Notes under the pieces: generated by a model
What the model was told of the DNA's origin: nothing
The model's database searches: none
The model's input: only the letters and a program-made list of their open reading frames with translations
Translations under genes and position numbers: made by a program
Assembly: GCA_001938485.1 (NCBI GenBank)
Contig: MQRK01243332.1
Location: forward strand, 5,501-55,936
Origin: Girardia tigrina
Lineage: Eukaryota
DNA length: 50,436 nucleotides
Direction of reading: 5' to 3'
In this document: in pieces, positions 3,504 through 31,151 of the stretch
Layout: the number at the start of each line of letters is the position of its first letter
Numbering within the stretch: position 1 is the stretch's first letter

Positions 3504-3735
3504 TAATATATTTGATAATTTGATATCTTTATGTATTATATCTTGATCGTGTAAATACTGAATTCCTTCAATAATTTCCAAGGATATTTTTATTATATTC
3601 TTCGGGTTCATAAAGTGAGACTTCATATAATTTCTCAGATTCATTTTCATTAATGGATAAAATATATCAATTCTCTTCTCATCTTCTGATATTTTCACTC
3701 CGAGAGTCGGTAAAAGATTCTCGTGGGAAATTTGA
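3504..3735 (-). CDS. DSTYK: Exon 4 of dynamin-like GTPase-kinase (DSTYK-like) gene: kinase subdomains IV-VIb
   Basis: taaag acceptor at 3736, gtaagt donor at 3503; QISHENLL...GIQYLHDQDIIHKDIKLSNIL; phase-2 join to exon 3 keeps frame. Confidence 0.8.
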
Positions 3736-3818
3736 CTTTAATATAAAAAATAATAAAATAAAAAGTGATAGTAGATTTAGTTTATTTCTATTCAAATAAT
3801 TAGATAAATATTTAATTA

Positions 3819-5115
3819 TTAGGGTGAACCAAAAGTCATTTCGTATTTTTTATTAAAAATTTAAACATAATTTTACAACAAATAAAAAAAAATTTAAGTT
3901 TCAAAGTAAAGGCCATTTGAATCTATAGCTTGAACCCATCTATGACCAAGTTGTTCGATCCCGCTGCGGTACCAATCCTTGTTCTTGGAAGCGAAGAATT
4001 GGTGACACCCGTTTTCGACCTTGGTCAGATTAGTGAAGCTGCGACCACGAATAAAGTGTGCCATAGAGCGGAAAAGGTGATAGTCGGAAGGCGCAAGATC
4101 TGGACTATACGCTGGATGTGGAAGAAGTTCAAAGGCATCGAGATTTTTGATTTTTTCCTTTGTTTGTTTGGCGGTGTGCGGTTTTGCATTGTCCTGTTGT
4201 AGAAGAACTCACTTTCGATTGATCAAAGCGGGGTATTTCTCGCCAAGTGTCGCATACATTCAATCAAGTTGGGCGCAGTAAAGATCAGCGTCGATGGTAC
4301 GACCATTTGGAACTAACTCGAAGTGAATCACGCCTTCGAAATTCTACCAAACACAAAAAAGTGCCTTCCTTGAGAAACGATCTCGTTTCGCTACCGGTTT
4401 CGCCATTTGTCCGGGATCCAACCATTGATTTTGTTGGTCTGGATTACTGAAGTAAACCCACTTTTCATCGCAAGTTACAATTCGACGGATAAAACGGTCA
4501 TCGCGCGGATTTTCAAGCAATTTTTGACAAGTTTCGAAACGCTTTTCGGCTTGAATTTGTGTCAATTCATGAGGCAAATCTCGACATCGTCTATTGACCT
4601 TGCCAAGAGCGTGAAGGTGTCGTACAATGGATATTTCAGGAATATCGAGTTCGGCCGACAATGTACGAGTACTTATTGACGGATTTTTCTCGACTGCTTA
4701 ACGAATTGCTCCGGAATCTACGGTGATAGGTCGGTCTGAACGTGCATTGTCTCCGAGGTCAATGTCGCCTTCGTTGAACCTTTTGAAACAATTTTGTGCA
4801 TTACGCCTTACTTTACATTACATTACATTATCGCCTTCAAATTCACATAACTTCTTTGTTGTTGCAGTTGTGTTTAAGCCCTGTTTTCAGTAATGGCGTA
4901 AAAGAACACGAATTTCAAAATTTTCTATGATTTTTTTAAAAGACCATAAAAATTATATTAACGACTAATTAGTAGTTTTAATAGATATTGTGATAGAGCA
5001 GTTCAAGGGCTTTATAAAGATATAACACATGTATATAAAATATCTTTATTTGTTAATAAGAAACAATTGAACAAAAAGACATAGAAAACACGAAAAGACT
5101 TTTGGTTCAAACTAA
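3819..5115 (-). mobile_element. Full-length (1297 bp) mariner DD34D transposon with inactivated transposase
   Basis: TIRs TTAGGGTGAACCAAAAGTC / GACTTTTGGTTCAAACTAA with TA on both sides; motifs IVTCDEKW, QDNAKPH, HPAYSPDLAPSDYHLF; stops and frameshifts. Confidence 0.93.
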
Positions 5116-5291
5116 TACTTTTGTTATAAAAATGAGAATTTTTTATTCTTATAATTATTTAAAAGACTTCCAAAATGAGTTCGTTTTTTCCATATCATTC
5201 AAATTTTTGCTAAATTGATTTAGTCAGTTAAAAAATTTATTAATCTTGTGGTGATAAAAAAAATATTGACTAAATAAGAAATGAAAAAAAT

Positions 5292-5520
5292 CATGGCTGC
5301 GGAGTCGGAGTCAAGGAGTCCGAGTTTAAGGATTTTTGGGGAAGTCGGAGTTGGAGTCAGAGTCGTGAAAATCGACTCCGACCAAAATAATAACGAATAT
5401 TATAAATTTAGCTAAAAAGGAGTTGGAGTCGAATGCTGAATCGAAGTTAGAGACGGAGTCAGAAATTTTACAAATATAGGAGTTGGAGTCGGGCAATTTT
5501 AGTCCGACTCCGCAGCCCTG
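5292..5520. mobile_element. hAT-type MITE with GGAGTC subterminal repeats
   Basis: TIR CATGGCTGCGGAGTCGGA / TCCGACTCCGCAGCCCTG; 8-bp TSD AAAAAAAT at 5284-5291 and 5521-5528. Confidence 0.8.
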
Positions 5521-6379
5521 AAAAAAATAACATTGACAATTGTTTAAACGAACTAAATGATAAAAAATAATGAACTCTACGTTTGAATGAGCAAATGTTA
5601 ATATTGGAAAATAAATGTATTGAATTCGTCACTTGTTTTTAATATGCATCTTGTTTTTACCCAATAATTCTATGACAATGACTCATTGGTCCGCCTTCAT
5701 GGATCTTCAATATCGAGTACGAGGACGCACACTGACCACCGGTATTGGGGAGTGCATCGAGCGGCGTCACAGAATGCTGCTACTTGGGACCGCATCGACT
5801 GGAATCAAACGATACGAGACGGTTGCAGGTCTGCAATTTGACAAACGAGAGACCACTGGACGATGACCACTCGACGGAACCGATCAGTCCGCAGTAGACG
5901 AACCCATGTGCAATTATGTGACCAGGTGAACGATTGAAGACTGGATTGCCCCCCTCCACATATCCATATAAAAATTAAGCTGACAGAATAGAAAGTAAGA
6001 AAAGAATATCAAAATCAAAGGCAAACAGGAAAAAGCATTTCATTGTTTTCAAATTTCATAAGTGAATGAAATGTTTTATTGGAAGCAAAACTCAATGACA
6101 ACATACGTCGATGAACCAAGCGTCAACTTCATGTTACTAAATACTAATGTCAAATGAAAAACATGTAAATGTGATATTAAAATTTAAAGATTCTATGTAA
6201 GCATTTTGATAGGTATTGGAAGAGAATTTCGTGTGAAGCATTTCTAATTAGATCGAATTTGCCGTAAAATTTATATCCACACATGTAATTAAGTTAAGTT
6301 TTAATTAATTTTAATATTTTTTTAAACAATCAGTTGATTTTTATTGACAAAATATACGATAAAGTCAAATTTTGCAGTG

Positions 6380-7150
6380 TAATTCATTTTTATTGTTGTG
6401 ATAAAAAGACATTATTTTCTATCAAAAAAACTGCAAAAGAATCGGGAGAGAATGGAAAAATTAAAGAAAATTATGACTTAAGAAAGGAATATTACTAAAA
6501 TGAAGCTGTCTTAACAACTAAATACTAATACAAAATTGTGCGGCTTGAGTTACACCATCTGGAAACCCAAAAGCTATGTTGCAAAATCTTAATTTGTTTG
6601 TTTTACGGTTGAAAGTATAGCCAGACAAAAAAAATATGACAACAATCTTCACCTGTTCGAGGAGATTGGACCCCCTTTATTGGTGAATATAGTGACTGAA
6701 GATGAGAAGTCATTAAGTCCTGCAATTCATTACTCCAAGAAAGAATAAAAAGCAGGTTTTATCATCTAGAATGGTAGTTCTCATCAGAAATATGTCATAT
6801 TGAGTATCTATCTAGATTATAGAAAAATTTTGAAGGTCGATTACACAGAAGGTATAATTAACTCTGAGTACTACCAAAATCTAGTCTTAAATTCAAGACC
6901 TTTTGACGCTTTCGACTTCATCTGGACCTTGATTTGCTATACGAAAATGCTTCTGTCCGTCCAATTCGTACTAATAGGCAACCCCATGATCTCGGATATT
7001 GCATTTAGTGACTTTTGGTTGTTCAAGCTAACTAAGAAACATTTTTCGAGTCACAGATTCGAATAATAGAACAATCGAAGCTATAAATTTTAAAGAAGTG
7101 TGTTGAAATTTCTCAGAGAAGAAGGGTCACAGTATATTCGAAATTAGTTT
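6380..7150 (+). mobile_element. Old, degenerate mariner transposase remnant
   Basis: Fragments NIVTEDEK and ISDIAFSDFWLFKL resemble the mariner first-Asp and SPDLAPSDF motifs. Confidence 0.55.
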
Positions 7151-7168
7151 CAAAACAATGATGAATAA

Positions 7169-8511
7169 CACTGGGTAACAAATTTTTATAAAAGTCATGT
7201 TTCATGACACTTTTAGTGTTTCTTAATGTAATTTTGCTCACTGATTCAGAAAATAACATCAGTTTCTCCTTACCTTCAACGGTTCAAAAGATAAACTAAA
7301 TTTATATAATTAACATATACGAGAAATCAGATTTAATTACCTTACACAAAATAAGCAAAACATCAACATAATTGATAGTTACAATGTCTCCTTTGTGTAT
7401 ACAATAAATGAAATGATTCAAGTAATCCTAAGTTCTTCAAAAATGCACAGTAGATTGTTTTTGTCTCTTATGAGTTGTGTCATCTGTGCGCACCAAACTC
7501 CATACATAGTCACCCATCCTGGCTTCGTCCCAACGTCCTTGATATCGCTTCTCCATCACCGTAATGTCCTGGTGGAACCACTCACCGTGCTCTTCGCTAA
7601 TATCTCCGAGATTTGGTCGAAAGAATTCTAGGTGAGAGTGCAGATTTGTTGACATTTTACAACCCAAATCTTGATAGCTGTTGAGTAATTCTTCAATCAG
7701 TTCCTTATAATTATCCGCTCTGTTGTTGCCAAGAAAATTAGAAACTACATGCTTGAAAGTAGTCCAGGATCTCTTTTCTTTTTCTTTCATTTTACTCTCT
7801 AGACTTTTTGATTCAAATCTGTCTCACTTGTGGTCTGACAAATACACCTGCTGAAACTTTAGCTTCTGATAGCTTGGGAAACAATGACTTGATCTCTTTC
7901 AGGGTTTCACCACTAGGATCTAGGGCTATTACAAATTGTTTAATCAATCCCAGTTTTATATGCACTGGAGGTAGAAGAATTTTGTCTGCAGAAACAAGAG
8001 CGACATTGTTCACGCTGTATGCACTTGGTTGCAAGTCACTTCGTTCAGGCTTTCTCTTTAGATATAATGAATTGCTTTGTCTCTGATATCCCATAAGCAA
8101 AGAAAACAAGGGAACTTTATGAATCCACCTTGCGATTCAAGAAGAAAACCAATCATCTTGAAATCTCCCCAAACATCCCATTTGTAGCTATCGTAGTTGA
8201 CCTTCTGCAGTAAAGTTCTAACATTACTATAGTCCTCCTTCAAGTGGACACTGTGACCGATTGGTATCGAAGGATTCGGATTGCAATTGTGGATTAATAA
8301 TGCTTTTAAACTCCTAGTAGAGCTGTCAATAAATAGTCACCATTGATCTCGTTGATGTGTGACACCAATTGCTTCAAACAGCCCCATCACGTCTGAACAA
8401 AAGCAAAGTGTTTCCTCAACTCTAAAGTACTGAACAAATGTAGTGTGTCTATTTTGGTACTTAGAAATTCTCACACTTGGATCAAATAAATTCAATTCCT
8501 TTAGTCTAGAT
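7169..8511 (-). mobile_element. Chapaev3-like (CMC) DNA transposon, 3' half, frameshifted transposase
   Basis: LPPVHIKLGLIKQFV and LHSHLEFFRPNLGDISEEHGEWFHQDI...RYQGRW motifs; terminus CACTGGGTAACAAATT preceded by TAA. Confidence 0.75.
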
Positions 8512-8600
8512 CAGTGATTCTCAACCTGGGTGCCGCGGCACTTTTGGGTGCCACGAGCGTCTGAAAAGGGTGCGCGAGCTGGTTAGATGTACTGTTATAG
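8512..8600 (+). mobile_element. hAT-Charlie-type terminus inserted into the Chapaev3 transposase
   Basis: CAGTGATTCTCAACCTGGG directly after GTCTAGAT (NTCTAGAN target preference); second end not found. Confidence 0.7.
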
Positions 8601-8678
8601 TTTTAAATAAAAGATTAATAAGATGGATTATAAATATTTATTAACAAAAAACAATGTTTAAATAGTAATATTGATTTA

Positions 8679-8827
8679 CGGGTTAAGGTTATGGTTAGGG
8701 TTCGGGTTAGGGTTTAGGTTAATGGTTACACTGAGGGTTAGAGATTAGGGTAAGGGTTAGTTTAAGGATTACGGTTAGGGTTAAGGGTTAGTGTTGGGGT
8801 TGGAGTTAGGGTGAGGGTTATGGTTTG
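8679..8827 (+). repeat. Degenerate interstitial TTAGGG-like tandem repeat
   Basis: About 150 bp of GGTTAG / GGGTTA variants. Confidence 0.8.
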
Positions 8828-8954
8828 TAAAGAAAATAAAAAAAATTAAAATTAATAAAATTGAAAAATTTAACACCCAATTCGAAACAATAAATAACTA
8901 ATTATAACTACGATATTTTAATTAAAACAGAAACTTTCAAAGACGAAATTTAAC

Positions 8955-8987
8955 TCACTCGTCATACATGACGGGTCTTTTCTTAGT
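8955..8987 (+). mobile_element. Helitron 3' end (hairpin plus degenerate CTAG|T)
   Basis: CGTCAT-AC-ATGACG hairpin, same as the Helitron end at 18586-18613, followed by CTTAG|T. Confidence 0.6.
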
Positions 8988-9567
8988 GTAAATATAAATA
9001 AATAAAATTTTGTTTTGAATCTGTGTATGTTTTTCATTTTTTTTATTTATTAATATTGAGAAATACAATAGATATTAAAAAAATGGAACGTAAGTCGATG
9101 TAGATGGAAAGCGATTTGGCACGTGTTTTAGATAAAAAAATTCCGAAGATTTATGTGCTCATGTTCATCGATCCCAGAAAAAATTTAAAATAAAATTTAG
9201 TTAAAATTTAAAATTTAACTAAATGCCTTTCACTCTGTAATAATGCCTAAAAATTATGTGTGTTTGAAGTTTGTGTGTGTATTGTGCGTATGTATTTTGT
9301 ATGCTTTCAATTGTGTTTGTATGTGCATTTATATATATCTTTATGATTTAGACTCTAGGAAAATGCACACGACATCCATTCTTATTGCTTTTTTTATTTT
9401 TACATTATATTTTCAGTAATTTTTATAATTCATTTTATATATGTATGCCTAAACTGCATAAGTAAATGAGAACGGTTGTATTCTTAAAACATGTGATAAA
9501 TCAAATTTCCATTGTAAAAATTAAATAAATCGATATTAATAATAATAATAATAAACTCAATAATTAC

Positions 9568-9688
9568 TTAGTATAAAAGATTTCTTCTGTCAAATGTTCC
9601 AATTTGTAGATATCCAACTCAATACTTTTCATGGCAATGGGTTCTTCGTGAAGTTTACACTCGTAAACCTTACTTCGAATTCCTGTTC
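9568..9688 (-). CDS. DSTYK: Exon 3 of dynamin-like GTPase-kinase gene: kinase G-loop, beta3 Lys and alphaC (not in the ORF track)
   Basis: 48-nt intron 9689-9736 (gtaatc..tttag); (IIG)TGIRSKVYECKLHEEPIAMKSIELDIYKLEHLTEEIFYT; gtaatt donor at 9567. Confidence 0.85.
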
Positions 9689-9736
9689 CTAAATCAGAAT
9701 ATTATCATAAAAATGGTGTAATGATACTAAGATTAC

Positions 9737-11048
9737 CAATAATGTTTCCAACTTCTATGTTACTAAACATGTACTGCCCTTTGACATTTAAGATTTGAAG
9801 AAACAAGTAAAAGAAAATTGGAGTTTTCTTAGTTATTTCGAATTTCATTGTTTCCGAATCAATGATTTTTTCCTTGATCAAAATAGTTTCTTTTTTCATC
9901 GCGTTCAAAAACGCCGTATGTTTAATTTCAAAGTCATCAAAAAGTCTTTTGCAAACATCTTCCGCTAATAAATGAATATCGCATTTTTTCAAATACTCTT
10001 CCGCTTGCTTCAATTTCCATTCTCGACTTTTGACATTAATTTCATTTTCTTTTAGTTCAATGTTTAATCCATTAGAAAGAAAGGTTTTAACACTGGTCAA
10101 AACAACATTCATAAAATCCTTGAAAATACCATGATTATGCTCAGGACTCAAGGAAGGTAACTTTTCGATTTTGTATTTAACGTTTAATATACGTTCAAGA
10201 ATGAGTTGGTAAGGGGCTTTTCCGACTTTTTTATTATTTAACGTTTGGTTGAAATTTTTTAAACTTTGAAAGGTCTTTTCTTCTATTGCGAAACGATAAT
10301 TTTTAAAAAGTTCTTCTGCCACAAAACTTCTTAATACATTCTCTAATCCTTGTACCAAGATTTTGATGATAGTTAACTGACACTGATCTATAACCTGTGA
10401 ATCACTAACGATTCCATCTTCTGGTATAAAAATAGAGGAAGGATATACTGTATCAATGATCGGATTAATTATTGAATCAGCCTCCTTTTCTAAATGTATG
10501 ATCAGACGACTTCTTAATTCTTGCTTAGAATCAGTAATAGCAGATTTAATATTTTCATACATTTCTTTTTCTATCCTTTTAATCAACGTAATTTGTTCAT
10601 AGTTTTCTTTTGTTTTTGTATCAAAATTTTGAGTATAGTTGATTATTTTTGCCGAAATATCCATGATGAAATTCATCACAATATCACAAGATTCACAAAT
10701 TTTATTTTTAAAATATAATGACATGATATTGTTGAGTTCTGTATAAAATTTACAAAATTGCATGAAGTGATATTGCGTCTCCGGATTGATGATGTTTGAT
10801 CTATGCTTAATGAAACATGTTAAAGAAGCCCCATGAAAGTATGGACATTCATTCCAATATTTATAAGATTTGGGTATAAAATTGTGATATTGCAACTTAA
10901 AAAATGACTTTGACATTTTACTTCTCGCGCAATTTATCGGATCTTGATTGATATCCTCTTCATTGTCTTCAGGGTCCAAATGAGAGACAAAATATATTAT
11001 TTCTAAATTTGGAACCAAGTTTTTCAATTCGTGAAGATTAGCAGTATC
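9737..11048 (-). CDS. DSTYK: Exon 2 of dynamin-like GTPase-kinase gene: end of G domain and long, probably helical, middle region
   Basis: 1312-nt stop-free exon in very AT-rich DNA; ttcag acceptor at 11049, phase 0; DTANLHELKNLVPNLEIIYFVSHLD continues the G domain at the G4 position. Confidence 0.85.
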
Positions 11049-11556
11049 CTGAATGTGATATTAATTATCTGTTATTGAATGTTAACATAATGATAATATA
11101 TAAGTCATAAAAATACATTTTAAAAGTATTTCGTAATAAACATTTACAATAACACAATCACTTATGAGAAAAACATAACCCTTGTAAATATTTTAGAAAA
11201 AGATGTCTTATTGATGTAATTTCCTTCACATTAATACTTTACCCAATTCTTATAAAATACCCTTCTTTTTTTAATTTTTTATGTAATTTTATACCGGCCT
11301 ATCGAAATTCGGAAACTGTAACTGATTAAACTTAAAATTAAAATTACATTCGGATTCACTACACTAATATTTATCAGATTCCCTTCATGTTTTGTTCTAC
11401 ATAGAACGTCTTCATGTGTTTGGTCCATTGAGAGAACAACAAGTTTCAATAACAAATATAGAATCGAGAACTCATCCTTTAATTTGATTAGCTCTCTATT
11501 CTGACACGACATGAAATCTTCATAGATTTCAGTCTTTCAAATGTAATGTGTGTGCT

Positions 11557-12630
11557 CAGTAGGGGGAAAATGTATGTTCTCCCTCAAATGGATAATTGAC
11601 CACCCGGGGGTGGGGTAGCCCGTTGCCATGGCAACGGTCGCATTCCCCCTAGCAACAGTTTCGGTCACCATAGTAACGGTTTCGGTTACAATAGCAACGG
11701 TATCGGTTATCATAGCTACCGTTCCGGTTCACTTGGTGACGGTAACCAAGGTCTTGGTTACCATAGCAACAGTAACCAATGACGTTTTTCATTAGCAACG
11801 GATACAGTGATTCAAGGCGGTTGTAACCATGGTAACGGTTACCGTATCCATAGCAACCGTGACCCTATCACTAGGGACCGTAGAAAAAAGTGCTAATCGA
11901 TAGTGCACATTGTGCCGCACATTTCTAATGTGCTAGCACAGTGATTTTTAAGTTGCACATGTGCAAAAGTGCAAAAATCAATACATAACATTTTTTAAAA
12001 GTACTAGTGTCAAAAATCGTTGTCATTTGTTTGATGCACATTATGATTCTCTATGTGCAATTAGAATTTTCATATATTGATTACCTTTCCATATAATTAA
12101 TTATGAAGACTCTAATTGCACATTCAGATAGAGAATCAAAATGTGCATCAAACACATGATATCGATTTTTGACACTAGTACTTTTAAAAAATGTTATGCA
12201 TTGATTTTTGCACTTTTGCACATGTGCAACTTAAAAAGCACTGTGCTAGCACATTAGAAATGTGCAGCACAATGTGCACTATTGATTAGCACTTTAAAAA
12301 TATCGATTAGCACCTCTGGGCACTGTGCAACAATCGATTAGTACTTTCTTCTACGGTCCATAGTGATTGGGTCACGGTTGCTATGGATACGGTAACCGTT
12401 ACCATGGTTACAACCACCTTGAATCGCTATATCCGTTGCTAATGAAAAACGTCCTTGGTTACCGTTGCCATGGTAATCAAGGCCTTGGTTACCGTCAGCA
12501 AGTGAACCGGAACCGTTGCTATGGTAACCGCGACCGTTGCCATGGTAACCGTTGTCATGGCAACGGGCTACCCCCAGCCCCGGGGGGGTCAATTATCGAT
12601 TGAGGGAGAACATACATTTTCCCCCTACTG
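11557..12630. mobile_element. Foldback / long-TIR non-autonomous DNA transposon (1074 bp) carrying X-box-like repeat arrays
   Basis: Arms of ~520 bp are inverted copies (CAGTAGGGGGAAAATGTATGTTCTCCCTCAA / TTGAGGGAGAACATACATTTTCCCCCTACTG); TGCT duplicated at 11553-11556 and 12631-12634. Confidence 0.9.
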
Positions 12631-14216
12631 TGCTCACTAGTCAGAGGACGAAGATGATCGTCAATCTTTTAATGTACGAATTTTTGATATCCGTAGCATA
12701 AAAATATATATAAAATATTAATTCGCAAAAAAATCAGTTTATAATTTTCATGAGAAAAAATATCAAAGCAATTAATCAATTGACGTTTAAATTTTATAAA
12801 TCCTCAGAATACGGCACTTTCAACTTTTTTTACAATTGTTGAAGAGTGACTGATCTGATGTGGTTGTTGAGGGTAGAATGTCTGTCTTCCTCAAAACTTT
12901 AATATTTAATCTTACCCTTCTTCCTTCTGTTATTCCCCTCCCCGAGGAGCGTAAATCACCATTTTTGTTCTAATCAAGTACCGTGAGAACATCTTCCGTC
13001 TTACCAATAATTGCAGTAGAGTTTTTTTTATCAGAAAAAGAATTCTGATCCCATTTTCACTATCTGCTCCTGATTTTACTAAGTTCACATCTTTCATATG
13101 TTCGATCTTTCCACAATTTACATAATACAATCTCGTGATATGATTCACTTCGATTTTAGAAACTTTGAAAAAGAAAATATATTCTTCCGTAGTATAAAAA
13201 AAGTGAATAGTTACAACTAATAAATCAGTGAATGTGTAACTCTTCGCTTTCTTACTTAATAAATAAAATAATTTATAATTAAAAGATATGTTTAATATTA
13301 ATAATATATTAGTCAAAAAATATTACAATAATAGCGTGTAAGTTTAAAAAATGTTTATAATAATCACTACCAACGGCGAAGAATGAGTAATAATAATAAT
13401 ATAAATAATAATTATAATATTTAAACTAATAATTTAAATATTAATATAAATTATATTTATATATAATAACATAAATAATTTAAATATAAATTGGAATGTT
13501 AATCCCTTATCCGAATGAGGACGCTAAAAGTAAGGTTCGGCGGATGAGACTGGTTCCAATAAATAAGGATAAAATATTACATACTACTAAACAATAACAT
13601 ATGATAATTGGTGACAGAATATATGCTGTGTAGAAGAAGAGGGTAAACTACAGGTAGAAATATAATTATTATCGTACGGATTCGTATCAACATAATTACA
13701 ACAACGACTATCTATTTTCGACCTCAATTCACAATCCAACATATTAAGCCGGCCAAGGAAGTCCTTTTTCGTGTTTGAATTTATGAGGACATTTTGGCAA
13801 ACTCATAAGTTTTAACTCGAATTTTTAAATTTAAATATTTAAACAAAGACGATTAATCACTTTCTCCATCACAAAAATTAAAATAGTTTTAAAAAATTTG
13901 AATTATGGATATCAGAATATGTTTGATATAAAATATTAATAAGATAACTGTAAAACATTTCGAGTTAAAGTTTAATAAATTCAAAGGTAATTAATTCAAG
14001 TTTAGGAATTAAATCCAAATTAAAAAAATCCAAGAAGTTAAAATAAATTAAACTAGTTAATCAAAAAATTAATTTTTTTATATCCATTCTTTATGCAGAC
14101 AGAAATCTACTTTGCCAACAAAGTTTTTAAAATTTAAAAAATTTAAGATATGAAAAATTTTTATTAAGAAAAACAAAAAATCAATAAATAAAAAAGTAAT
14201 TCTTTTTCAATTAATA

Positions 14217-14385
14217 TTGTTCTGGAACTCCGAATTTTCCTTTTTGTCTCATTTTGGGACCTTCAATAGTTTTTTGATCAAATTTTGATATAATCATTTC
14301 TTGCCATCGAGAATGAGTAAGCGTGCCAAGTTTGAAGAAAATCGATTGAGTAAAAGGCCTTCAAAAACAAGTTTCTAATTCCATA
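14217..14385 (+). repeat. Interspersed repeat fragment, second copy at 39828-39998
   Basis: Shared TTGTTC.GGAACTC.GAATTTTC ... AAGTTTGAAGAAAAT.GATTGAGTAAAA. Confidence 0.7.
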
Positions 14386-16536
14386 TATATTTATATATAG
14401 AAACTAAGCTCATAAAAAATCGAGAAACATTTTACAAAAAATGAATTGGCAAAATTAGAACAACAATGATATTTTAAAATGTGAATAGATTTAAGATATG
14501 GCGAATTATAAATTTGTAGTAATATAATATAAATTTAAACATTGCTAAGTATTTCTTTAAATTATATTGATGTTAAAAATTGTTAAAAATTAATTGTTAA
14601 AAATTAATTTAAATTGTTTTTTAAATTAAATATTAAAATGTAATTCTGTAAAATTATTGCAATTAAAAAGTAATAATAATTTGAATTCGTAAAAATAATA
14701 ATTTTAATATAATAACATATCATTATTTATAATTCAGTATTTTTATGTATAATCAATCTGGTCGAAAAGAAAACAAAAGTTCCTCAACAAAAATTGTTTG
14801 AATAATTGTTATAAAATAAAGTTTTGTGTTCCAATGACATCAATTATTGATCACGAAACCAACAGAATTCAAACCCAATTTTAATAATTATAACATTATT
14901 ATTTAAACTAATATTTTGTAACTATTTAAATGAATCTTAATTATATATTTTTATACGTAAATACATAAATATAATAAAAGCAAGCAAAATAATTCAGCGA
15001 TTTTTGTCATTCAAACTCGAATAATATTCTGATCATGAGAATAATAAAACCATTGATTTTTGAATATTCGAAGAAAGGGACGTCAATATAAATATCAATA
15101 ACAAATTATTAATATAATGAAATGCGTTTAACATTTCGAAACACGTGTCTTACACAAGCTGTCTTTGCTCCAACCTCCATTGGTCATGTGTATTGCTAAG
15201 TGATCAATTCATCAAGTGATCATTGTGACAATTTATTTTGGTGTGAAGTTTTATGATGTTGAAGAAAGGCATTGATTATCCAAAAGTTCACTTAAGCTGA
15301 TAAATTTAGTGATATAGGTTGCTACTTCATATTATCCATTAATATTTAATAAATTAATCTAATTAATAAGATTTAAATAGTATTGGTAAAGAAACGAAAA
15401 AAATCCTACATTTTATATATTATTAAATATTTTATATATTATTATTATATTAAATATTTTTATAAATAATATTATTAATTTTGATTTGTCATACACCAAA
15501 TTTTCTTATTTTATCAAAATCAGTTCTATACATAGATTTATATCTAATTTTGTATACAAACATATCAAAATGATATAAATAAATCAATAATTTGTAAATT
15601 GTATAACTATGATAAAGTTTATGATAAATTATGTTATATTAATGTTTAATTTTCCTTTGTAAAAGGGATTTTACTTTTAATGAAAAATTTTCTTTACTAT
15701 TTTAAAATATTACTAATTTTAAGGGAACTTTTCATATTTATTGTCGAATAATTTAATAATCATACAAATTAGTACTTAAAATTAGTAATTCTGGCTGAAA
15801 TTGGAGTCCCATATTGATGTACACATTCGTATAGAACATATATTATAGATTTATTATATTTAGATAAATTCGCCATTTAATTTCTGATATGTAATACTTC
15901 AATAAACCAAAAACTTCACTCTTATTTTAATGATATTCAAGTTTTGATGACAGCAAAAAAATATAATCTCGATATTTTATCAGACGACTATGAACTGTTT
16001 TATCAGGAAAAATCATATGAGGGTCAGTAAAACTATTGATTAAGAAGGGTTACAAAAATTCAATTGCGGTTGTGGTGCTCTCGTCAATGTCACAATAATA
16101 AAAAAACTCATCAGAACAAAAATCAGAACGGATGCACGTTTCACGGATTCGTTTGTACTGGGGATCACGGAGTCTGATATCACAGTCGCGATTGATATCG
16201 ATCGCGGTCCACACTGAAAAGCCCCTTGGTCACAACCTAGCAGCTGAACGTCTGGGTCGTCACACCGCTGGGACGGCTCTCGGCGGGAGACTCTGCGGAG
16301 ATAGCGAAGCGGCTACATAGGGAACCCAATCTAGGCCATTAGAAAATGGAGTCATCCACAGTCGAGTAGTTCGGGATGCGGCTGACTCAAGCAGTGTCAC
16401 GGACTTCAGCGGTTAATATAAATTTGATAATATTTAATATTTTACATAGAGGTTAATTTGTGAGATTTTATTTTATTAATTCTTTTAGAAGACTTCTTTT
16501 AGAAAAAACAAATTATAGAATATAATATAAATAATA

Positions 16537-16791
16537 CTCTCTCTGTTCCGAAATAATGTTTACATTTGGGATAAATCTTTCCGATTATCAGGATAGATAA
16601 TAGCACGTCAGGACCAACAAAAATTTCCATGGTTACAGGTCGCATTTTTTAACAGCATTTATGTCATGCTTTCCTTTTCTCGTTTTCAGCACTTCATAAA
16701 AGAATTTAATCAAGTGAGACCTTTCTAGTAAAGAAGATTGCAGCATTTAACACAAATTAGAAATGTAAGCATTATTTCGAAACAGAGGGAG
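16537..16791. mobile_element. Tc1/mariner (Stowaway-like) MITE, 255 bp
   Basis: TIR CTCTCTCTGTTCCGAAATAATGTTTACATTT / AAATGTAAGCATTATTTCGAAACAGAGGGAG; TA flanks. Confidence 0.85.
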
Positions 16792-16942
16792 TAATATAAT
16801 ATTATAATTGATTTCTGAATTACGTAAATTAATTTAACGAGAATTTTTTTATTTTTATGAAAAATTATTTGAAATTTTCTAGATACTTTTGGCTACCAAT
16901 TTTTAATATAATTTTAGTATACTAACATTACTGTTCTTTTAA

Positions 16943-18569
16943 CCCGTTGGGTTTACGACTTATAACTTTTGAACGAAGAGGAATTTTTCAGTGCGGTTTA
17001 TTTCTAAATATTATTAACTTTTCTAGTCCAGCTCTCTCGCTCTCTAGTTCAACTTCTATTCAATTTATTGCATCAGAACAAAACTGGAGCATGTGGAACA
17101 GGGAGAAAAAATCGTAAAGGATAGCCAAAATTCACTGGAAATTCACGAAAAGGAGATGTTCAATGCTATTGATCTTCAGCTCTTCTAGCAATGAAATGGA
17201 AAGACAAACGAGATGTCTACATGTTATCGACTCTAAATAGTACAAATTTCTTGAACAGTAAAAAAATTGATAGATCAAACGGAACAGAAATAATGAAGCC
17301 CGCTCTAGTCATGGAATATTCGCAAAAAATGGGAACTGTTGATGAAACTGACATGCAGATATCATTCTCTGTTTCAATTAGGAAAACTTTGAAGTGGTAT
17401 AAAAAGTTATTCTTTCATATGATGGATATGGCGATATTCAATTCGTATATAGCATACAGAATGAAGCACAATGCTAAAGACTTACAGCTTGCTCAGTTCA
17501 AATTGCTTTTGGTTAGAGAAATACTTCAGAGATATGATCCTTCAGAGAGAAATAGAGTTGGAAGACATTCTAATACTCCTACACCTTTGAGATTAGTTGC
17601 TCGTCACTTTCCCGACAATTTTCCACAAGATCTAAAGAGTAGATAACGAAGTAGAAGAAATTGTATTGTTTGTAGTGCGAAACAATTTCGACAACGAAGT
17701 TATTTCATGTGCCTTGACTGTAATGTACCATTATGCGTACCAAATTGTTTCCGAATTTACCACACTAAGCTTCACTTTGATGTAGATGAGTGATAAATAT
17801 TATTAATAAAAAAATTTTTTTATAAAAACAACCACGTTTTTCAAGCATTACCAATGCACTAAAAAGAGGAAAATAATTTTTTTTAAGACATGTGCGAAAT
17901 TTTATACCTAACCAAAAACGTGGGGCGGATTTCTGAATTACTGCTATTAGTAACTGCTATTTCCTCTTTACTGCTTTTTAGTAACAATCGATCATTTCTA
18001 TGNNNNNNNNNNNNNNNNNNNNNNNNNNNNNNNNNNNNNNNNNNNNNNNNNNNNNNNNNNNNNNNNNNNNNNNNNNNNNNNNNNNNNNNNNNNNNNNNNN
18101 NNNNNNNNNNNNNNNNNNNNNNNNNNNNNNNNNNNNNNNNNNNNNNNNNNNNNNNNNNNNNNNNNNNNNNNNNNNNNNNNNNNNNNNNNNNNNNNNNNNN
18201 NNNNNNNNNNNNNNNNNNNNNNNNNNNNNNNTGTCATCGGAAGCAAGCCTGTATAAAAAAATTCAGCTCAATTGGATGACTGAAAGTGGTCGAAAAATTA
18301 ATCGCAAGATTTGTTCCAGACAAGAAACGAAGCTAAGTAAAACGTGGTAAGTAATAATAAAAACCAATTCTAATCAGTAAAATATCATAATACTGAAATA
18401 TTCATTGAAAACTGTCGTTTGTAGCTCAAAAAATTCATTTTTGTTAATCTTATGTAATAAATATTTCTAAGTCTTTTTTTAATTTTTTTCATGCTGAATT
18501 ACCTTTGTTACGTCTAAAACTTCAATAAAATTAATATATCTCCAAAACGAAAATTCGGTAGTGAACGGG
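16943..18569 (+). mobile_element. Internally deleted piggyBac element retaining the transposase C-terminus
   Basis: TTAA|CCCGTT ... AACGGG|TTAA; WKDKRDVYMLST, YSQKMGTVDETD, KWYKKLFFHMMD; Cys-rich tail CIVC..CLDCNVPLCVPNCFRIYHT lies after a premature TAA at 17644; contains an N-gap. Confidence 0.88.
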
Positions 18570-18585
18570 TTAATATATATATATA

Positions 18586-19106
18586 CTAGTAAATAACCCG
18601 TCATGTATGACGGATATAATTATATAGAGTTAAAATTTCAAATAAATTTTCAAGACATTTTTTTTTAAAATTCATTTGTTTTCCACATTTAATCATTAGA
18701 AATANNNNNNNNNNNNNNNNNNNNNNNNNNNNNNNNNNNNNNNNNNNNNNNNNNNNNNNNNNNNNNNNNNNNNNNNNNNNNNNNNNNNNNNNNNNTTGAA
18801 AATCCTACCGAAAAATATAATGAATGAAAAATGTTGAATTCCAAAAGGCCAACCCAAAATTTGCTTAAAAAGTCAAAATTAAGAATGCTCATATTATCTA
18901 CTTACAATTGTAAGTGGATAATTATATTAATAATAATTCATATGGAAAATTATCATGAATAATTCTACTAATAATAATTTTCCATATGAATTATTATTAA
19001 TATAAATATCTACTTACAATTGTAAGTAGATAATATGAGCGTTCTTGACAGCGTTAGTGATGCAGTGAGGCAGGCAGTGAGTGACTTGGGCTTTTATAAG
19101 ATAAGA
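18586..19106 (-). mobile_element. Non-autonomous Helitron, both ends present
   Basis: Minus strand A|TCTTATCTTATAAAAGCCCAAGTCACTCACTGCCTGCC ... CCGTCAT-AC-ATGACGG hairpin ... CTAG|T; inserted in a TA run with no TSD. Confidence 0.8.
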
Positions 19107-19986
19107 TATATATGTATATATATAATCTTATATCGATTTTTATCATCTAATAAAATAAAGGCGTAATAGATGATTAATAACATATGAATATAAAAATATA
19201 AGAAATAATGAAATTCTGTAATATATGATTGGATATATACAAAAAATATTTAATAAAAACGTTGATATTATATATTGTTTTGTGAATATTAATTATAATA
19301 ATAGAAAATAATGGTCATTGTTAGTTTCAATAAAAAATAATCATATTTAAGTAAAGATCAAAACTTATAAAGTGAATAGTTTAATAAAAAATTTTTAAAA
19401 TGTGGTAAAACAATTATTGAAATGAGATACTGAGTGATGGAAGCAAGATTAAATAAAGTAACATATGTATATAGAAAAAATCGAGCAGGATCGGTTGCAA
19501 TCAGTGTACTCGGCCACAAGTGTATTTACATCAAAAGAGTTTTAACAATCAGATGAGTCTTTTGTTGTCGCTTTTTAAACAGTTAATTGGTTACTAAGTT
19601 GTATAAAGAGGGCAATTAGTGATTGTAACAATTTAGATTACTAATCACTGACAAAAGTAAATATATGTAACAATAATTTACCGTTTGCTAATAGACAAGA
19701 TTCCACACTAAAATATACTTTAAAAAAGTAATATGCATCGTATATATATATATATAATAAATAAAAGGAGACTCTGTTATCGACCCTGTAATAATTATGT
19801 AATACAAATTTAGAAATATTCTAAATTTAGTGATCGAGTAATATTTTATTTAATTTTGTATTATTTAACAACGTTGATTATCAATAAAGTTAAATTTATT
19901 CACAAGAATATGAAAAAAATATTTTTGTTATTTAATAATATTGAAATGTTTGATAAAATATGATTTTTATTAAAAAAAACACTCAC

Positions 19987-20739
19987 GGTCTGTTTAACAC
20001 CTGAGCGGCCATCAATAACATAGATTATAATTGGTAAAGTATCTTGGATTAATTTTGATATGTTGATCAGACAATCATTTTCATTTAGTCCAGGAGAATC
20101 TATTAAATCAATTCCAGATTCCAAAAATTTCACTTTTAAACTAACTCTCAGTTTTGTATGGTTGTCCCCATCCTCACATCGTACATACCTCCTTGGAAGG
20201 GAAGCATTTCTAAGACTTTTTTTCTTTACAACTCTACCATCCTCGTCAATTATTTGAAGATAATTTTTTTCACCGAAGGAAAGACGTGTTATCTTCTCCG
20301 TACATCGATCATAAGGAGTAGGTAAAACATTTTTTTCAAACAAGCAATTTATGAATGAACTCTTTCCACTTTTTAATTCTCCAAGAACGGCAATTATTGG
20401 GTTTTCTATATTCATATTTTCCATTTTCAACTGACCGCCTACGGAAAAAGCCCCGAGTTCTTCAATGACATTCATCAAACTATCGGAATCAAAGCACTTC
20501 ACAATGTCCGCACTGAGAAGGTGTGATACTTCACCGAATAGGTTGATGGTTCGAATCGTTAATGATATTAACTTTTCCCTTCGTTGTCGATAATTTTGGA
20601 TGCATTTATTAAGATCAGAAAAGGAATCCTTATTTGCAGGTCTTCTCCTTGTCAATCTAGTCCACATATTATCGCAAAATGATGATTGAATAGTGAATAC
20701 ATGACCGGATATCACTTTTGACTGGTAATGCAAGTTCAT
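19987..20739 (-). CDS. DSTYK: Exon 1 of dynamin-like GTPase-kinase gene: Dynamin_N-type P-loop GTPase
   Basis: G1 IAVLGELKSGKSSFINCL, G2 VLPTPYDRCT, G3 IDLIDSPGLNE; gtgagt donor at 19986; the ATG at 20739 is provisional. Confidence 0.88.
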
Positions 20740-21022
20740 ACACGTTACAAATCAATAAGTGGTTTTTGTTTAAGACTTTGCATAAACATTAGTCATAAAA
20801 ATTTATAATCACATATTAGTTGAAATATAAAATTACATTCCAGATTATTTAAATTTTACTCATTTTTAACAATTAAATTTGAACATTTATGTAAGCTTCT
20901 AATATTATATTTGGAAACAACTTTGAAAATCTGAAGATATTACCTTATTAAACTACTGTGACGGATAACCAGGTTTAAATTTATATTGTGGACGTTTGGG
21001 TTTAAAATATTTAAGTCAAGTG

Positions 21023-21023
<1 letters not shown>

Positions 21024-21056
<33 letters not shown>
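21024..21056. repeat. (TA)n microsatellite running into an assembly gap
   Basis: Seen directly. Confidence 0.9.
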
Positions 21057-21269
21057 NNNNNNNNNNNNNNNNNNNNNNNNNNNNNNNNNNNNNNNNNNNN
21101 NNNNNNNNNNNNNNNNNNNNNNNNNNNNNNNNNNNNNNNNNNNNNNNNNNNNNNNNNNNNNNNNNNNNNNNNNNNNNNNNNNNNNNNNNNNNNNNNNNNN
21201 NNNNNNNNNNNNNNNNNNNNNNNNNNNNNNNNNNNNNNNNNNNNNNNNNNNNNNNNNNNNNNNAATTTT

Positions 21270-24044: not shown

Positions 24045-26590
24045 TTATTGAAAAGATTTATAGTTAGTACAATGAATATCCCCAATAACGGTTTTACATA
24101 AGTTTGTCATTTCAGGTTGGAAGAGGTGATTACGGTAGTTACATGAGTGGAGGCCTAATCGGGCTTTCTGGATGAAGTACCAACCATCGAAGGTGATCCA
24201 TCCTCTCGTGTCTTTTAATCTCTTGTCTTGGAGCAATAGGTTCCTGTGTGCCTTGTTTATGTGGTTAAATAAGATAGAGGATATGGCCGCTTCGATGGAG
24301 GCATTGACGAAAACAGTCTTGTTACCGAAGAGGATAGAGAGATTCACCCTGTTACTGTCATGTATCCAATCGAGTTTGGCGTCAATGTTTAGCTCCTTTT
24401 TCAGCATGATTCTGGTGACAGTGAATTTGAACTATTGGCATGCTGCTTTGTAGTAAGGTTTGGGCACGTTGCTATTCAAGTAATGGAAGATGTTTGGGAT
24501 GTCGTAGTGTGAGTAGAAGTTGCTGAGGTTGGCAAAGGCAGATTCTTTTAGTTTTGGATCTTTGGAATAGCGAGACGATAAATGTACGTGATTGATTGGA
24601 CTGCGTATTCGTCTGCCGTTCTCCTGAGTCCAGCTCCTCCTTCAGCTGTTGTTGTGTAGAAAAAGTGGTCACTGATGTTCAGAGGCAATTTCATAAATTT
24701 TTGAACTTGCCTTCTAATTTTGATGTCGAGAGTGGGGGCCTCTTCTTTATTGTTAGAGAAGTTGTTCATGGCGATTTTGTTAAGGCGAAGGTGGAAAGGT
24801 AGTTTGGTATGTAAAAAAAGCCTGTATGCGGTGAATTTCTGACTGGGAAATAGGTCGGATTTCTCAACTTTCTTGAGAAAATCTATGATTTCGTCAAATT
24901 TGGATCTCGGATTCGTGTATTGGTTGTGGGTTACCGGTGATCCAAAAAAATTGATGAGGTGTTTATTGTTGACGAAAGGGATAGGAATTCCGTTGATGGT
25001 TAATTTGTTGGTGCGGTTTTGGTTGATTACTGGAACGGCAAGAACTCTACATTTGGTTGGTTGGAAGTGGAGGTCTAGTTTTTCGGCGAGGAAAGATGTT
25101 GCATTTATCATGCTCTGCAAGTCTTGTTGGTTGCTTGCAATTATGACAATGTCGTCGCCATATGCAATAACTTTATATGTGGTTTGGCCGATGGTATATC
25201 CTTTGTTTGGGAAGGTGCTCTCTATATTCTTGATGAGAGCTTTTATGTATATGCAAAAAAGGAGAGATGATAGTGGGCATCCTTGTTTCACTCCTTAATT
25301 GATTTATGTGGATCCGATGTTTCTGCCTTCGATTTGTACATCGGTGGTGTTGTTTTTGTAAAGACTTCTTAGGAGGCTTAGCAAAATGGGGTCGATACCA
25401 AGATGACGGAGGATTTGGAAGAGTAAGTTCTGTTAGACACTTCCGTAGGCATCTTTAATGTCTCCGAAGAAGAAAGCTTGCTTGGGGATTCTGTTTCTAA
25501 TGAGATTCCAAAGTCTGACGTCGTCTCGGATGATGTTGATGACGGCATTGTGGTCATGGCAACCTTCGCGGGATCCAACGGCTTTTTGGTTTGGTGAGAT
25601 GACATCCTTGTCAAGGATCCAGTGTGTGCAATGGTGTACGATCAAGGAGGCGGCAATCTTAGGTAGAGTATTAGATTTGGTAATTGGTCTCCATGCATTT
25701 GGTAGTCGAATTTCTTCTGTGGATTTCCCGTTCTTTGGGATCATGATGGTGGATGATTTCCTCCAGGATTTGGGGACTTTTCCTTGGGTGATTGCTTCCG
25801 TAGGAAGGGCAATGATGTCATAAGTGACGTCAACCTTCTTTATGTCTGAGGGTCGTATTTTGTCGGATCCTGATGATTGTTCTTTCATTTTAGAGATTAT
25901 TCCTTTGACATGGTTTCTATCAGGCAAAGGTACGCTGAAAGGGTCGTATGGAAAGGAGGGGTAGAGGTGTGCAAAATGGTTGATGGGTAATTTTTTGACT
26001 CCAGTTTCTTTATCAGCAAAAATACTACTGATTTGACTGTTGCTGGGGGTAGTAGTTACACCGTTCTTTGCGTAAATTGCCATTTTAACTGCTTCCTTGG
26101 GTTGTTTGCGGAAAAGTTTGTTGAGGGCAATATTTGATCTGGGTTTGCTATTTTTGGTATTTTCGATGAATGTTAATCAACCGTCCATGGCGTTACGGAT
26201 ATTAGCGATGAGTTGCGCGTCTAAGATTTCAATTCTAGACTGCTGGCTAATAGGGATGGCTACAGCAGCAGTCGGAATTAGTTTTTTTACGGTATTGCTG
26301 GTGGTGTTGGGGGCAGTGGTGCGTTGGTGGTTATTTCATCCTCATCTTGCTTCTTCTTTTTGTGGGATCGTATTTGAGTGAAGTTTTCACTTTCATTTTG
26401 GAATGTCTCAATGGTTGAGAAGATTTCGGACGCGATTCGCTTCTTCTTGTTTGGAAGGGCAGCGGATGGGTTCATTGCGTTGTCTGAGTTGCGTTGGGGG
26501 GACTATTGACATGGTTGGTTTGGAAGGGCTGAGTCCGAAGGGCTATTTCCGAAAGAAATCGTCAGATTGCCGTTCCGCGATGTGTCGTTA
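24045..26590 (-). mobile_element. Degenerate non-LTR retrotransposon, RLE-type (R2/NeSL-like) reverse transcriptase
   Basis: WRKSSTIMIPK, WRPIT, PNQKAVGSREGCHDH, DIKDAYGSV, KQGCPLSSLLF, AYGDD, GGAGL; several frameshifts; endonuclease domain not seen. Confidence 0.82.
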
Positions 26591-29726: not shown

Positions 29727-31151
29727 TTAGTCCATATCAGCCCCATATTCTCCGTATCTCCTAATTGCTGCCGACATAACTCCATTCTCCCGTTCCTTCT
29801 CATTGTCTTTCCTACGGTCTTTAGTTTTGGATTTATCGGTAAACCGATCTCTTGACTTTCCTCGGGAGCGACTTCTATGTTTTCGTCGATTGTTTGAGCG
29901 GCTTCGATGTTTGTATCTATCTTTAGATCGACTTCCTAAAGCGATGTAAAAAGATTATTCAAAAGACATAAATTTTTGTGATAAAAATGTAAAATGTTGT
30001 ACTTTGTCTTTTATTACGATCCGAACGTGACTCTTTGTGATGTCTGTCACGATGTCTTTCCTTCTCTAAATCTCTTTCGCGATCCCTGTGTCGATGTTCT
30101 TTTGATCGACTTCGTCTTCTTCTGCTTGAATCGCGATCTCGTGAATTATCTCGAATCGATAATCGAGAATTCTGCTCAGGAGGGCCTCTTCGAGTGTCAC
30201 CCAATCCTCCTCCTACCATTCATGACACAAAATTAATAAATTATTCCAAATCTGTAAAATACTTACCAAGTCTGCGTGGCCTCCAGCTTTTCATGGTTCG
30301 ACCACGTTCAACGTCTACAAGAACACGACGTCCATCGATTTTTTTGCCATCCGCATGTTTATAAGCCGCTGAAAAGAAATTTCAAAAATTATTTCTTTTA
30401 AAATAGGAAAATTTTACAATTTTCAGAATAAGTTGTCGACAACATTTATAATAAATAAAACAATAAGTTTGACGGAAAACTTTTTAAAAAAACGTGTTTT
30501 GAAACTAATTGTAGAAATGATACATTAATAGGTATTATTGTTACAAATAAAAAGTGGAAGCAAATAAATAAGCTTTAGGCACTTACCACGCATATCCCTT
30601 TTGTGCTCATATTCGATAAAGCAGTAACCCCTCGGTTTTTCATTCAATGAATTTTTTATCATTTGAATTGTTTTAATTGTTCCATAACTTTCGAATTCCC
30701 GTCTGATTTTACTTTCCGTTGTATCGTAACTCTGAAATAAAATTTTCAAAAGCTATTAAAAGAATAGCTTTTAATTTACAATTCGAGCAACAAATAAAGT
30801 TTTGTAAGGATCTTCAGTGGCGTTTTCAATCTCAAGAGGTTTCCATAGAGCTAGGTCTTGTTCGAGTTTATAAGCTGTTTGTTCTTCTTTTTCTTTTCTC
30901 TGAAATAAGAATGTTATAAAAAGTTCATTAGTTTTTGAAAATTTAACTTTTCTTTCGCGTTTCTCTTCTCTTGTTTCGACTTTTGGCGGGATTGGAGTTT
31001 CAGAAGGATCTTCGAAATGTTTGATGTACTGAGCTATTCCAGTATACGGTAAAGACCGATGGTTTTTCGGACGTTCAATTGGCGGAAGAAACGGTATTGG
31101 ATCTCGAGGGGCAAAAAGAGCCAACAAATTTGGGGGTAAGTACGAGGTCAT
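29727..31151 (-). CDS. SNRNP70: U1 small nuclear ribonucleoprotein 70 kDa; exons 31151-30948, 30899-30780, 30731-30587, 30368-30267, 30212-30003, 29935-29727
   Basis: [43 protein letters not shown] (RNP1), [39 protein letters not shown]-rich tail; all five introns GT-AG and frame-consistent. Confidence 0.97.

What the first reader, a model, noticed from the sequence alone, without database searches (positions are those of the whole stretch)
3504..20739. One gene across 17 kb: dynamin-like GTPase fused to a protein kinase (DSTYK-like with an intact P-loop)
Seen: three ORFs listed separately in the track plus one unlisted 121-nt exon splice in frame through canonical sites (19987>11048 phase 0, 9737>9688 phase 1, 9568>3735 phase 2). 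This gives about 800 stop-free codons: G1 GELKSGKS, G2 PTPYDRCT, G3 DSPG, a ~400-aa linker, then kinase IGTGIRSKVY / AMK / EEIFYT / HENL / HKDIKLSN. Known: a G domain followed by a helical stalk is the dynamin/mitofusin layout, and DIKLxN resembles the DSTYK catalytic loop; vertebrate DSTYK is usually described only as a kinase with a non-catalytic N-terminus. Inference: a GTP-regulated, possibly membrane-associated signalling kinase, analogous to ROCO proteins but built on a dynamin-like module.
Basis: partly seen in the sequence, partly recalled or inferred. Interest (0 to 1): 0.85.

Follow-up and report, generated by a model that had tools for sequence, protein, structure and literature searches.

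The report
Mitofusin-like GTPase fused to DSTYK-type kinase
This is a real, spliced flatworm gene that joins a dynamin/mitofusin-type GTPase to a kinase, and its relatives show that the supposedly 'non-catalytic' front two-thirds of the disease-linked kinase DSTYK is a decayed version of the same membrane-shaping module.

Summary
Observation confirmed. The four exons splice through GT-AG sites into one stop-free frame, the assembly gaps lie only in intron 1, and RNA-type contigs show the joins (junctions 1 and 2 in four studies, junction 3 in one). Corrections: the start is probably the ATG at 20664, and the kinase C-lobe lies outside the window (candidate exon on another contig, unproven). 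The gene is not the DSTYK orthologue, which this genome encodes separately. It is one of four paralogues in a widespread invertebrate subfamily (Nematostella, amphioxus, hemichordates, Lingula, Macrostomum) named 'DSTYK-like' in databases, where Pfam already lists Dynamin_N plus Pkinase. So the fusion is old, not unique. The notable result: this subfamily's N-terminal part aligns over its whole length with canonical DSTYK (HH-suite E 5e-57), whose G motifs are all degenerate, and a bird DSTYK model best matches mitofusin-2 and BDLP. I found no paper saying so; zebrafish Dstyk is needed for vacuole membrane fusion by an unknown effector. This copy is the most diverged paralogue (G4 Lys to His, non-RD loop), so 'intact GTPase' is less sure here. 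The scan had not noted this elsewhere.

The parts
19987..20664 (-). Exon 1, coding part from the probable start ATG (20664): N-terminal neck helix and G domain with G1-G3. The open frame extends to an upstream ATG at 20739 that the RNA contigs do not reach.
   Evidence: (Dynamin_N 2.6e-13)
20359..20382 (-). G1 / P-loop GELKSGKS
20299..20316 (-). G2 region PYDRCT (conserved Thr; family consensus PCT)
20089..20100 (-). G3 DSPG
11049..19986 (-). Intron 1 (phase 0, about 8.9 kb, length only estimated because it holds two N stretches); contains a piggyBac-like transposase fragment
9737..11048 (-). Exon 2 (1312 nt): end of G domain with G4, then long four-helix stalk that returns to the neck; no transmembrane segment
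10974..10985 (-). G4 SHLD: Asp kept, the Lys found in all 34 aligned family members and in the paralogues is His; no run shows another letter here
9689..9736 (-). Intron 2 (48 nt, phase 1, GT-AG), skipped in all four runs
9568..9688 (-). Exon 3 (121 nt): kinase glycine loop GTGIRS, beta-3 Lys (AMK, 9635-9627), alpha-C Glu
3736..9567 (-). Intron 3 (5832 nt, phase 2) with DNA-transposon fragments
3504..3735 (-). Exon 4 (232 nt): kinase hinge to catalytic loop HKDIKLSN (3533-3510), followed by a GT donor; the last exon (activation segment, C-lobe) is not in the window
   Evidence: (Pkinase 1.6e-10)

Best explanation
The gene encodes a protein of about 915 residues: a BDLP/mitofusin-type module (neck helix, G domain, four-helix stalk that folds back to the neck) followed by a DSTYK-type protein kinase. 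It is a fast-evolving flatworm member of an old animal subfamily in which the G motifs are kept; canonical DSTYK shares the same module with G motifs decayed. Shown: gene structure, expression as one spliced contig, domain order, family, homology to DSTYK. Inferred from how dynamin-superfamily proteins work: GTP binding makes two G domains pair and swings the stalk; because the chain returns to the neck, the kinase sits next to the G domain, so pairing would bring two kinase domains together and switch them on, probably on an endomembrane bound through an amphipathic stalk tip rather than a transmembrane anchor. It would thus work as a nucleotide-gated membrane scaffold or tether with a built-in kinase output. 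In this copy nucleotide binding may be weaker or less guanine-specific (G4 Lys to His).
For: Splicing and single contigs; conserved exon structure in paralogues; Dynamin_N and Pkinase; 870-960 aa invertebrate homologues with G1-G4 and a C-terminal kinase; G1, G2 Thr and G3 kept in this copy; 10 synonymous against 13 non-synonymous codon changes over about 264 and 1086 sites between the window and the most diverged run, a ratio near 0.3; exon-2 model ranks dynamin-family stalks first (Drp1 Z 11.9, SynDLP 11.0, dynamin 9.5; Foldseek best E 0.004); profile-profile match to canonical DSTYK, probability 100, E 5e-57, and directly from the flatworm exons E 2e-14 and 1e-12; bird DSTYK 1-655 model matches MFN2 (Z 20.0, 365 residues, rmsd 5.0) and BDLP (E 2e-12); DSTYK acts at late endosomes (PMC11933320) and is needed for vacuole fusion (PMC7012607).
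Against: No biochemical or cell data for any member. G4 is non-canonical and the catalytic loop is non-RD in this copy; its branch is two to five times longer than the paralogues'. No hydrophobic paddle (best 19-residue hydropathy 1.2). The exon-2 fold scores are within the range that helical bundles reach by chance. The last exon is assigned only by elimination. Canonical DSTYK works without G motifs, and 19 of 34 G-intact homologues lack an intact catalytic loop, so the two activities need not be coupled.
Confidence: 0.45

Rival explanations
1. The dynamin-like module is the working part (membrane tethering, fusion or tubulation driven by GTP, as in BDLP and mitofusin) and the kinase is an appended, dispensable regulator.
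For: Across the family the G motifs are better kept than the kinase motifs: 34 of 34 have G1, only 15 of 34 an intact H-R/K-D loop (the set was selected by a G-domain search, which biases this). Full-length stalk retained.
Against: No transmembrane or strongly hydrophobic paddle, unlike two outlying G-domain-kinase proteins that have one. In zebrafish the Dstyk phenotype is attributed to kinase activity (PMC7012607).
Confidence: 0.2
2. This particular copy is a diverging paralogue on the way to a pseudo-enzyme: it keeps the fold as scaffold, partner or decoy for its three paralogues, with weak GTPase and/or kinase activity.
For: Only aligned member without the G4 Lys; HKD for HRD; longest branch of the four paralogues (0.88 against 0.16-0.41); the candidate last exon has Ile where the activation segment usually has Thr; both kinds of decay have happened repeatedly in this family.
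Against: P-loop Lys/Ser, G2 Thr, G3 Asp/Gly, G4 Asp, kinase Lys, Glu, Asp and Asn are all kept; frame open and expressed in four studies; excess of synonymous change per site.
Confidence: 0.2
3. The subfamily is a set of innate-immune sensors or effectors (like Mx and GBP, or bacterial DLPs against phage) that assemble on foreign or damaged membranes and signal through the kinase; this would explain repeated lineage-specific expansion and fast change.
For: Several divergent copies per genome in hemichordates, Lingula, Tubulanus, Macrostomum and here, some on the same scaffold; patchy presence across animals; mammalian DSTYK phosphorylates STING (PMC11933320).
Against: No expression or selection test run; expansion alone does not show immunity. 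This is compatible with the best explanation rather than exclusive of it.
Confidence: 0.13
4. The GTPase and kinase exons belong to different genes, or the join is an assembly artefact across the gaps.
For: Intron 1 holds two N stretches; no single laid stretch spans all junctions; runs are only guessed to be RNA.
Against: Exon 1 letters directly follow exon 2 in contigs of four studies, exon 4 letters follow exon 3 in one; paralogue on contig C184541 splices the same four exons into 810 stop-free codons; full-length homologues in many animals.
Confidence: 0.02

Closest known systems
Invertebrate 'DSTYK-like' proteins (e.g. XP_048589780.1 Nematostella, XP_019629705.1 Branchiostoma, UniRef A0A1I8HXC8 Macrostomum, XP_013414081.1 Lingula)
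   Same: Same order and size: Dynamin_N G domain, about 400-residue helical region, kinase; window gene groups with Macrostomum members (SH-aLRT 99, quick trees). Databases already carry PF00350 + PF00069 for several.
   Different: G4 His for Lys, HKD for HRD, long branch. The subfamily has only automatic names; I found no paper that describes it.
Canonical DSTYK (dusty protein kinase)
   Same: Related kinase domain; N-terminal 620 residues homologous over their whole length; same predicted fold.
   Different: All 20 canonical sequences lack the G2 Thr and the G3 Asp and Gly, most lack the G1 Ser/Thr, G4 is not recognisable; Pfam does not call Dynamin_N in them. The genome has its own canonical DSTYK on contig C124238 (62% to bird over a kinase exon).
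Bacterial dynamin-like proteins (BDLP) and mitofusins
   Same: G-domain sequence (PDB 2j68 E 1.2e-9) and neck-G-stalk topology.
   Different: No transmembrane or hydrophobic paddle; a kinase is fused after the returning helix.
ROCO proteins (LRRK2)
   Same: GTPase, helical region and kinase in one chain; a model for GTP-dependent kinase control.
   Different: G domain is dynamin-type, not Roc; no COR, LRR or WD40 found. Independent solution, analogy only.

Membership tests
Dynamin superfamily, BDLP/mitofusin type | G domain matching Dynamin_N with G1, G2 Thr, G3 | tested here: met
   Pfam 50.8 bits against cut-off 27; motifs aligned; PDB relatives BDLP, DLP, IniA, MFN1
Dynamin superfamily, BDLP/mitofusin type | G4 (T/N)KxD | tested here: not met
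   SHLD in this copy; paralogues have TKLD
Dynamin superfamily, BDLP/mitofusin type | Long helical neck and stalk after the G domain | tested here: met
   Exon-2 model pLDDT 83, long helices; top five structural matches all dynamin family, though Z 9-12 is modest for helical bundles; language-model look-alikes are bacterial DLP helical regions
Dynamin superfamily, BDLP/mitofusin type | Membrane-inserting paddle or transmembrane hairpin at the stalk tip | tested here: not met
   Best 19-residue hydropathy 1.23; an amphipathic helix is not excluded
Dynamin superfamily, BDLP/mitofusin type | GTP hydrolysis, G-domain dimerisation, membrane remodelling | not testable with these tools
   Needs biochemistry
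Canonical DSTYK orthologue | Falls inside the DSTYK clade and is the genome's best match to vertebrate DSTYK | tested here: not met
   Another gene (C124238) is the best match and has the GRGQYG, HRDIKLKN, DLG signature; window gene lies outside the canonical clade in two quick trees; the AU test did not finish
DSTYK family in the wide sense | N-terminal region homologous to that of DSTYK plus DSTYK-related kinase | tested here: met
   hhalign E 5e-57 (family), 2e-14 and 1e-12 (flatworm exons 1 and 2); kinase search from a family member returns canonical DSTYK next after its own subfamily
Active protein kinase | beta-3 Lys, alpha-C Glu, catalytic Asp and Asn | tested here: met
   AMK, EE, HKDIKLSN; Arg of HRD is Lys
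Active protein kinase | DFG-type motif and C-lobe | tested here: inconclusive
   Not in the window; candidate exon on contig C69597 has DYG and APE but is linked only by elimination and length
ROCO | Roc and COR domains | tested here: not met
   No Roc or COR hit on exons 1-2 at E up to 1; structural matches are dynamins

The most novel reading that the evidence does not exclude
DSTYK and its invertebrate sisters form an undescribed branch of the dynamin superfamily: kinases mounted on a mitofusin/BDLP-like tether. Members such as this gene are still GTP-gated, while vertebrate DSTYK is a pseudo-GTPase whose module itself docks on or tethers endolysosomal membranes, which would supply the missing direct link between Dstyk and vacuole fusion. 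The structural half is well supported here (about 0.85); the functional half and its absence from the literature are not shown.
Probability: 0.3. Interest if true: 0.85.

Novelty: new variant of a known kind. Interest (0 to 1): 0.62.

Why it matters
DSTYK is linked to urinary tract malformation and spastic paraplegia type 23 (PMC8490499), STING signalling at late endosomes (PMC11933320) and notochord vacuole fusion, where the authors could not find the effector (PMC7012607). Two-thirds of the protein is described simply as non-catalytic (PMC8636471). Reading that part as a mitofusin-like module makes concrete tests possible: membrane binding, dimerisation through the G-domain face, and mapping of patient variants onto neck, hinge and stalk. 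The G-intact invertebrate subfamily provides the working reference state, and a flatworm with four expressed or intact copies is open to RNAi. It would also be a second, independent animal design of a GTPase-kinase fusion beside ROCO/LRRK2. The window gene alone is an ordinary, somewhat decayed member of this subfamily.

Tried and rejected
Word-based homologue search with exon 2 found nothing at E 0.001 (length limit excludes full-length relatives). Searching contig bases 1-5500 beyond the window for the last exon found none; 3.3 kb there is N and was left alone. The defining paper on dusty kinases (PMC4277547) is not held, so its family criteria were not tested. Seven paper searches combining DSTYK with dynamin, Dynamin_N, GTPase, pseudoGTPase or mitofusin terms gave no paper making the link; subscription journals and database fold classifications are not covered. 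The careful tree and the AU test did not finish; the position of canonical DSTYK among the G-intact groups differed between the two quick trees and is unresolved. A Pfam TcdB_N hit on exon 1 (E 0.025, below cut-off) was taken as chance. Rejected: separate genes; DSTYK orthologue; ROCO membership; start at 20739. The G-domain exons of the genome's canonical DSTYK were not found. As the operators asked, the spliced model was searched and folded exon by exon by reference; the joined protein was used only inside local scripts (frame check, alignments, trees) and was not sent to any search or fold tool, so there is no model of the joined protein. No human sequence was used; a bird stands for vertebrates. 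Earlier scan notes gave nothing on this gene.
Full report
Observation. The four stated exons lie on the minus strand at 20739-19987, 11048-9737, 9688-9568 and 3735-3504. Each junction has GT and AG at the stated base, and the spliced frame has 806 codons without a stop, against 76 and 77 stops in the other frames. The two N stretches are inside intron 1 and cannot affect the frame; they were not filled. Exon 1 matches Pfam Dynamin_N (E 2.6e-13, above cut-off) and exon 4 Pkinase (E 1.6e-10); exons 2 and 3 match nothing.

Transcript evidence. Twelve public runs hold half or more of the words of exons 2-3; none is on record as RNA, most are guessed to be. Laid on 9300-11300, contigs from four studies cover only exons 2 and 3, skip the 48-nt intron with GT-AG ends, and all four run on past 11048 with letters that match window 19987-20016, the end of exon 1. 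One run shows the start of exon 4 joined to exon 3. In two runs one 2915-nt contig has 713 nt before exon 2 and 769 nt after exon 3. If colinear, its 5' end is near 20699, which leaves out the ATG at 20739 and includes the one at 20664; homologues begin at that point. Differences between the window and the most diverged run change 10 codons silently and 13 non-silently over about 264 and 1086 sites, which points to purifying selection.

The missing end. The kinase breaks off after the catalytic loop at a GT donor. No further exon is seen in the window or in the readable part of the 5.5 kb of contig beyond it, most of which is N. The genome has four exon-2-like, four exon-4-like and four last-exon-like sequences. 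By elimination the most diverged last exon, on contig C69597, would belong to this most diverged gene. It codes 135 residues with DYG and APE motifs; the RNA contig length predicts 129 nt after the stop and a polyadenylation hexamer lies at +130. This is suggestive, not shown. It would give about 915 residues.

Family. A HMMER search of 1.84 billion proteins with exon 1 returns, near the top, 870-960-residue proteins with a G domain at the front and a kinase at the back. Sources name them DSTYK or DSTYK-like from Nematostella, amphioxus, Macrostomum, Lingula, nemerteans and hemichordates, and Pfam Dynamin_N plus Pkinase is precomputed for several. Three paralogues in this genome share intron positions and phases where their exons can be followed; one splices the same four exons into 810 stop-free codons. 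In two quick trees the window gene and its paralogues group with Macrostomum (support 99), apart from canonical DSTYK. I infer a flatworm, probably a planarian. The genome also has a canonical DSTYK with the usual kinase signature. The gene is thus a paralogue in a G-intact subfamily, and the fusion is at least as old as the split of cnidarians and bilaterians if the tree is taken at face value.

Link to canonical DSTYK. A profile of the N-terminal parts of 34 G-intact proteins finds all 21 canonical DSTYKs tested (E 1e-63 to 4e-24), and the two profiles align over 589 columns with probability 100, E 5e-57. Profiles of the flatworm exons alone give E 2e-14 (exon 1) and 1e-12 (exon 2). In the alignment canonical DSTYK has lost the G2 Thr and the G3 Asp and Gly in all 20 rows, mostly the G1 Ser/Thr, and has no recognisable G4. 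An AlphaFold model of bird DSTYK 1-655 (pLDDT 82) matches BDLP first in Foldseek (E 2e-12) and MFN2 first in the full structural scan (Z 20.0, 365 residues, rmsd 5.0), followed by Fzo1, EHD4, SynDLP, IniA and BDLP. The alignment used for this model included G-intact rows, so it is not independent of them; but the ESM Atlas's own DSTYK models are its nearest matches (TM 0.56 and 0.50), with mitofusin 2 at 0.49. The model of the window's exon 2 (pLDDT 83) ranks dynamin-family stalks first, at modest scores, and exon 1's closest solved relatives are BDLP, a Campylobacter DLP, IniA and MFN1.

Peculiarities of this copy. G1, G2 and G3 are canonical. G4 reads SHLD, whereas all 34 aligned homologues have Lys at the second place and the paralogues read TKLD; no run shows another letter there. 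The kinase keeps its Lys, Glu, Asp and Asn but is non-RD. The branch is 0.88 changes per site against 0.16-0.41 for the paralogues. There is no transmembrane segment in the stalk. Among the 34 G-intact homologues only 15 have an intact catalytic loop, so the family has lost either activity in different branches: kinase-dead with G motifs, and, in canonical DSTYK, kinase-active without them.

Mechanism. From established knowledge of BDLP and mitofusins, GTP binding pairs two G domains and swings the helical bundle. The chain here leaves the G domain, forms the stalk and returns to the neck just before the kinase, so the kinase sits by the G domain. The simplest reading is a GTP-gated dimer on a membrane that brings two kinases together (confidence 0.45). 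Rivals are a membrane-remodelling protein with an accessory kinase (0.2), a decaying pseudo-enzyme copy (0.2) and an immune effector family (0.13). None of these has been tested biochemically.

What is known. Papers describe the DSTYK N-terminus as non-catalytic and poorly conserved (PMC8636471). DSTYK acts at late endosomes (PMC11933320), and zebrafish mutants dock pre-vacuolar membranes but fail to fuse them, with no effector identified (PMC7012607); that paper never mentions GTP or dynamin. My searches found no paper linking DSTYK to the dynamin superfamily, but they miss most subscription journals, the 2006 family paper and fold databases, and the link is easy to find with AlphaFold models, so it may be on record.

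Verdict. The gene is a diverged member of a widespread subfamily that databases annotate but papers apparently have not described. Its value lies in what it shows about DSTYK. Novelty: new variant of a known kind. Interest 0.62. The spliced model was searched and folded exon by exon; the joined step was left out of all search and fold tools.

Noticed in passing
window 30771-31151 (-): First coding exon of a U1 snRNP 70 kDa gene (Pfam U1snRNP70_N, E 2.4e-22).
   Followed up: partly
window 17191-17646 (+), in intron 1: C-terminal fragment of a piggyBac-type transposase (DDE_Tnp_1_7).
   Followed up: partly
window 3897-4697 and 7437-8510 (-), in intron 3: Broken Tc1/mariner-type transposase (DDE_3) and a second broken transposase-like stretch with no Pfam hit on the piece tested.
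   Followed up: partly
window 34046-37017 (+); 24548-26083 (-); 44519-45598 (-): Frameshifted retroelement remains: LTR-type protease/RT/integrase-like ORFs, a non-LTR-like reverse transcriptase (RVT_1), and a gag-like region with zinc knuckles. Observed only.
   Followed up: no
window about 17770-18000 and 20940-21060: Near-identical sequence beside two different N stretches, with TA runs, in intron 1 and upstream of exon 1: a repeat or an assembly duplication.
   Followed up: no
G000:C231693 (L021-L024): Two paralogues of this gene lie in tandem on one contig; further exon-1-like and partial exon-2-like pieces exist on C84785, C224992, C249332, C185304, some broken.
   Followed up: partly
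P0076 (Mytilus), P0052 (Argopecten), P0049 (unnamed Logan contig), P0062 (cyanobacterium): Other dynamin-like G domain plus kinase fusions. P0049 and P0076 have a hydrophobic paddle in the stalk; the cyanobacterial protein has the kinase in front. Possibly older branches or independent fusions.
   Followed up: partly
P0015, P0018, P0029, P0032, P0033, P0035, P0038, P0045 and others: Many G-intact DSTYK-like proteins of hemichordates, nemerteans and Lingula have a dead kinase catalytic loop, the mirror image of canonical DSTYK.
   Followed up: partly
window 11557-12630, in intron 1: Repetitive stretch that an earlier scan note calls a foldback transposon; not checked.
   Followed up: no
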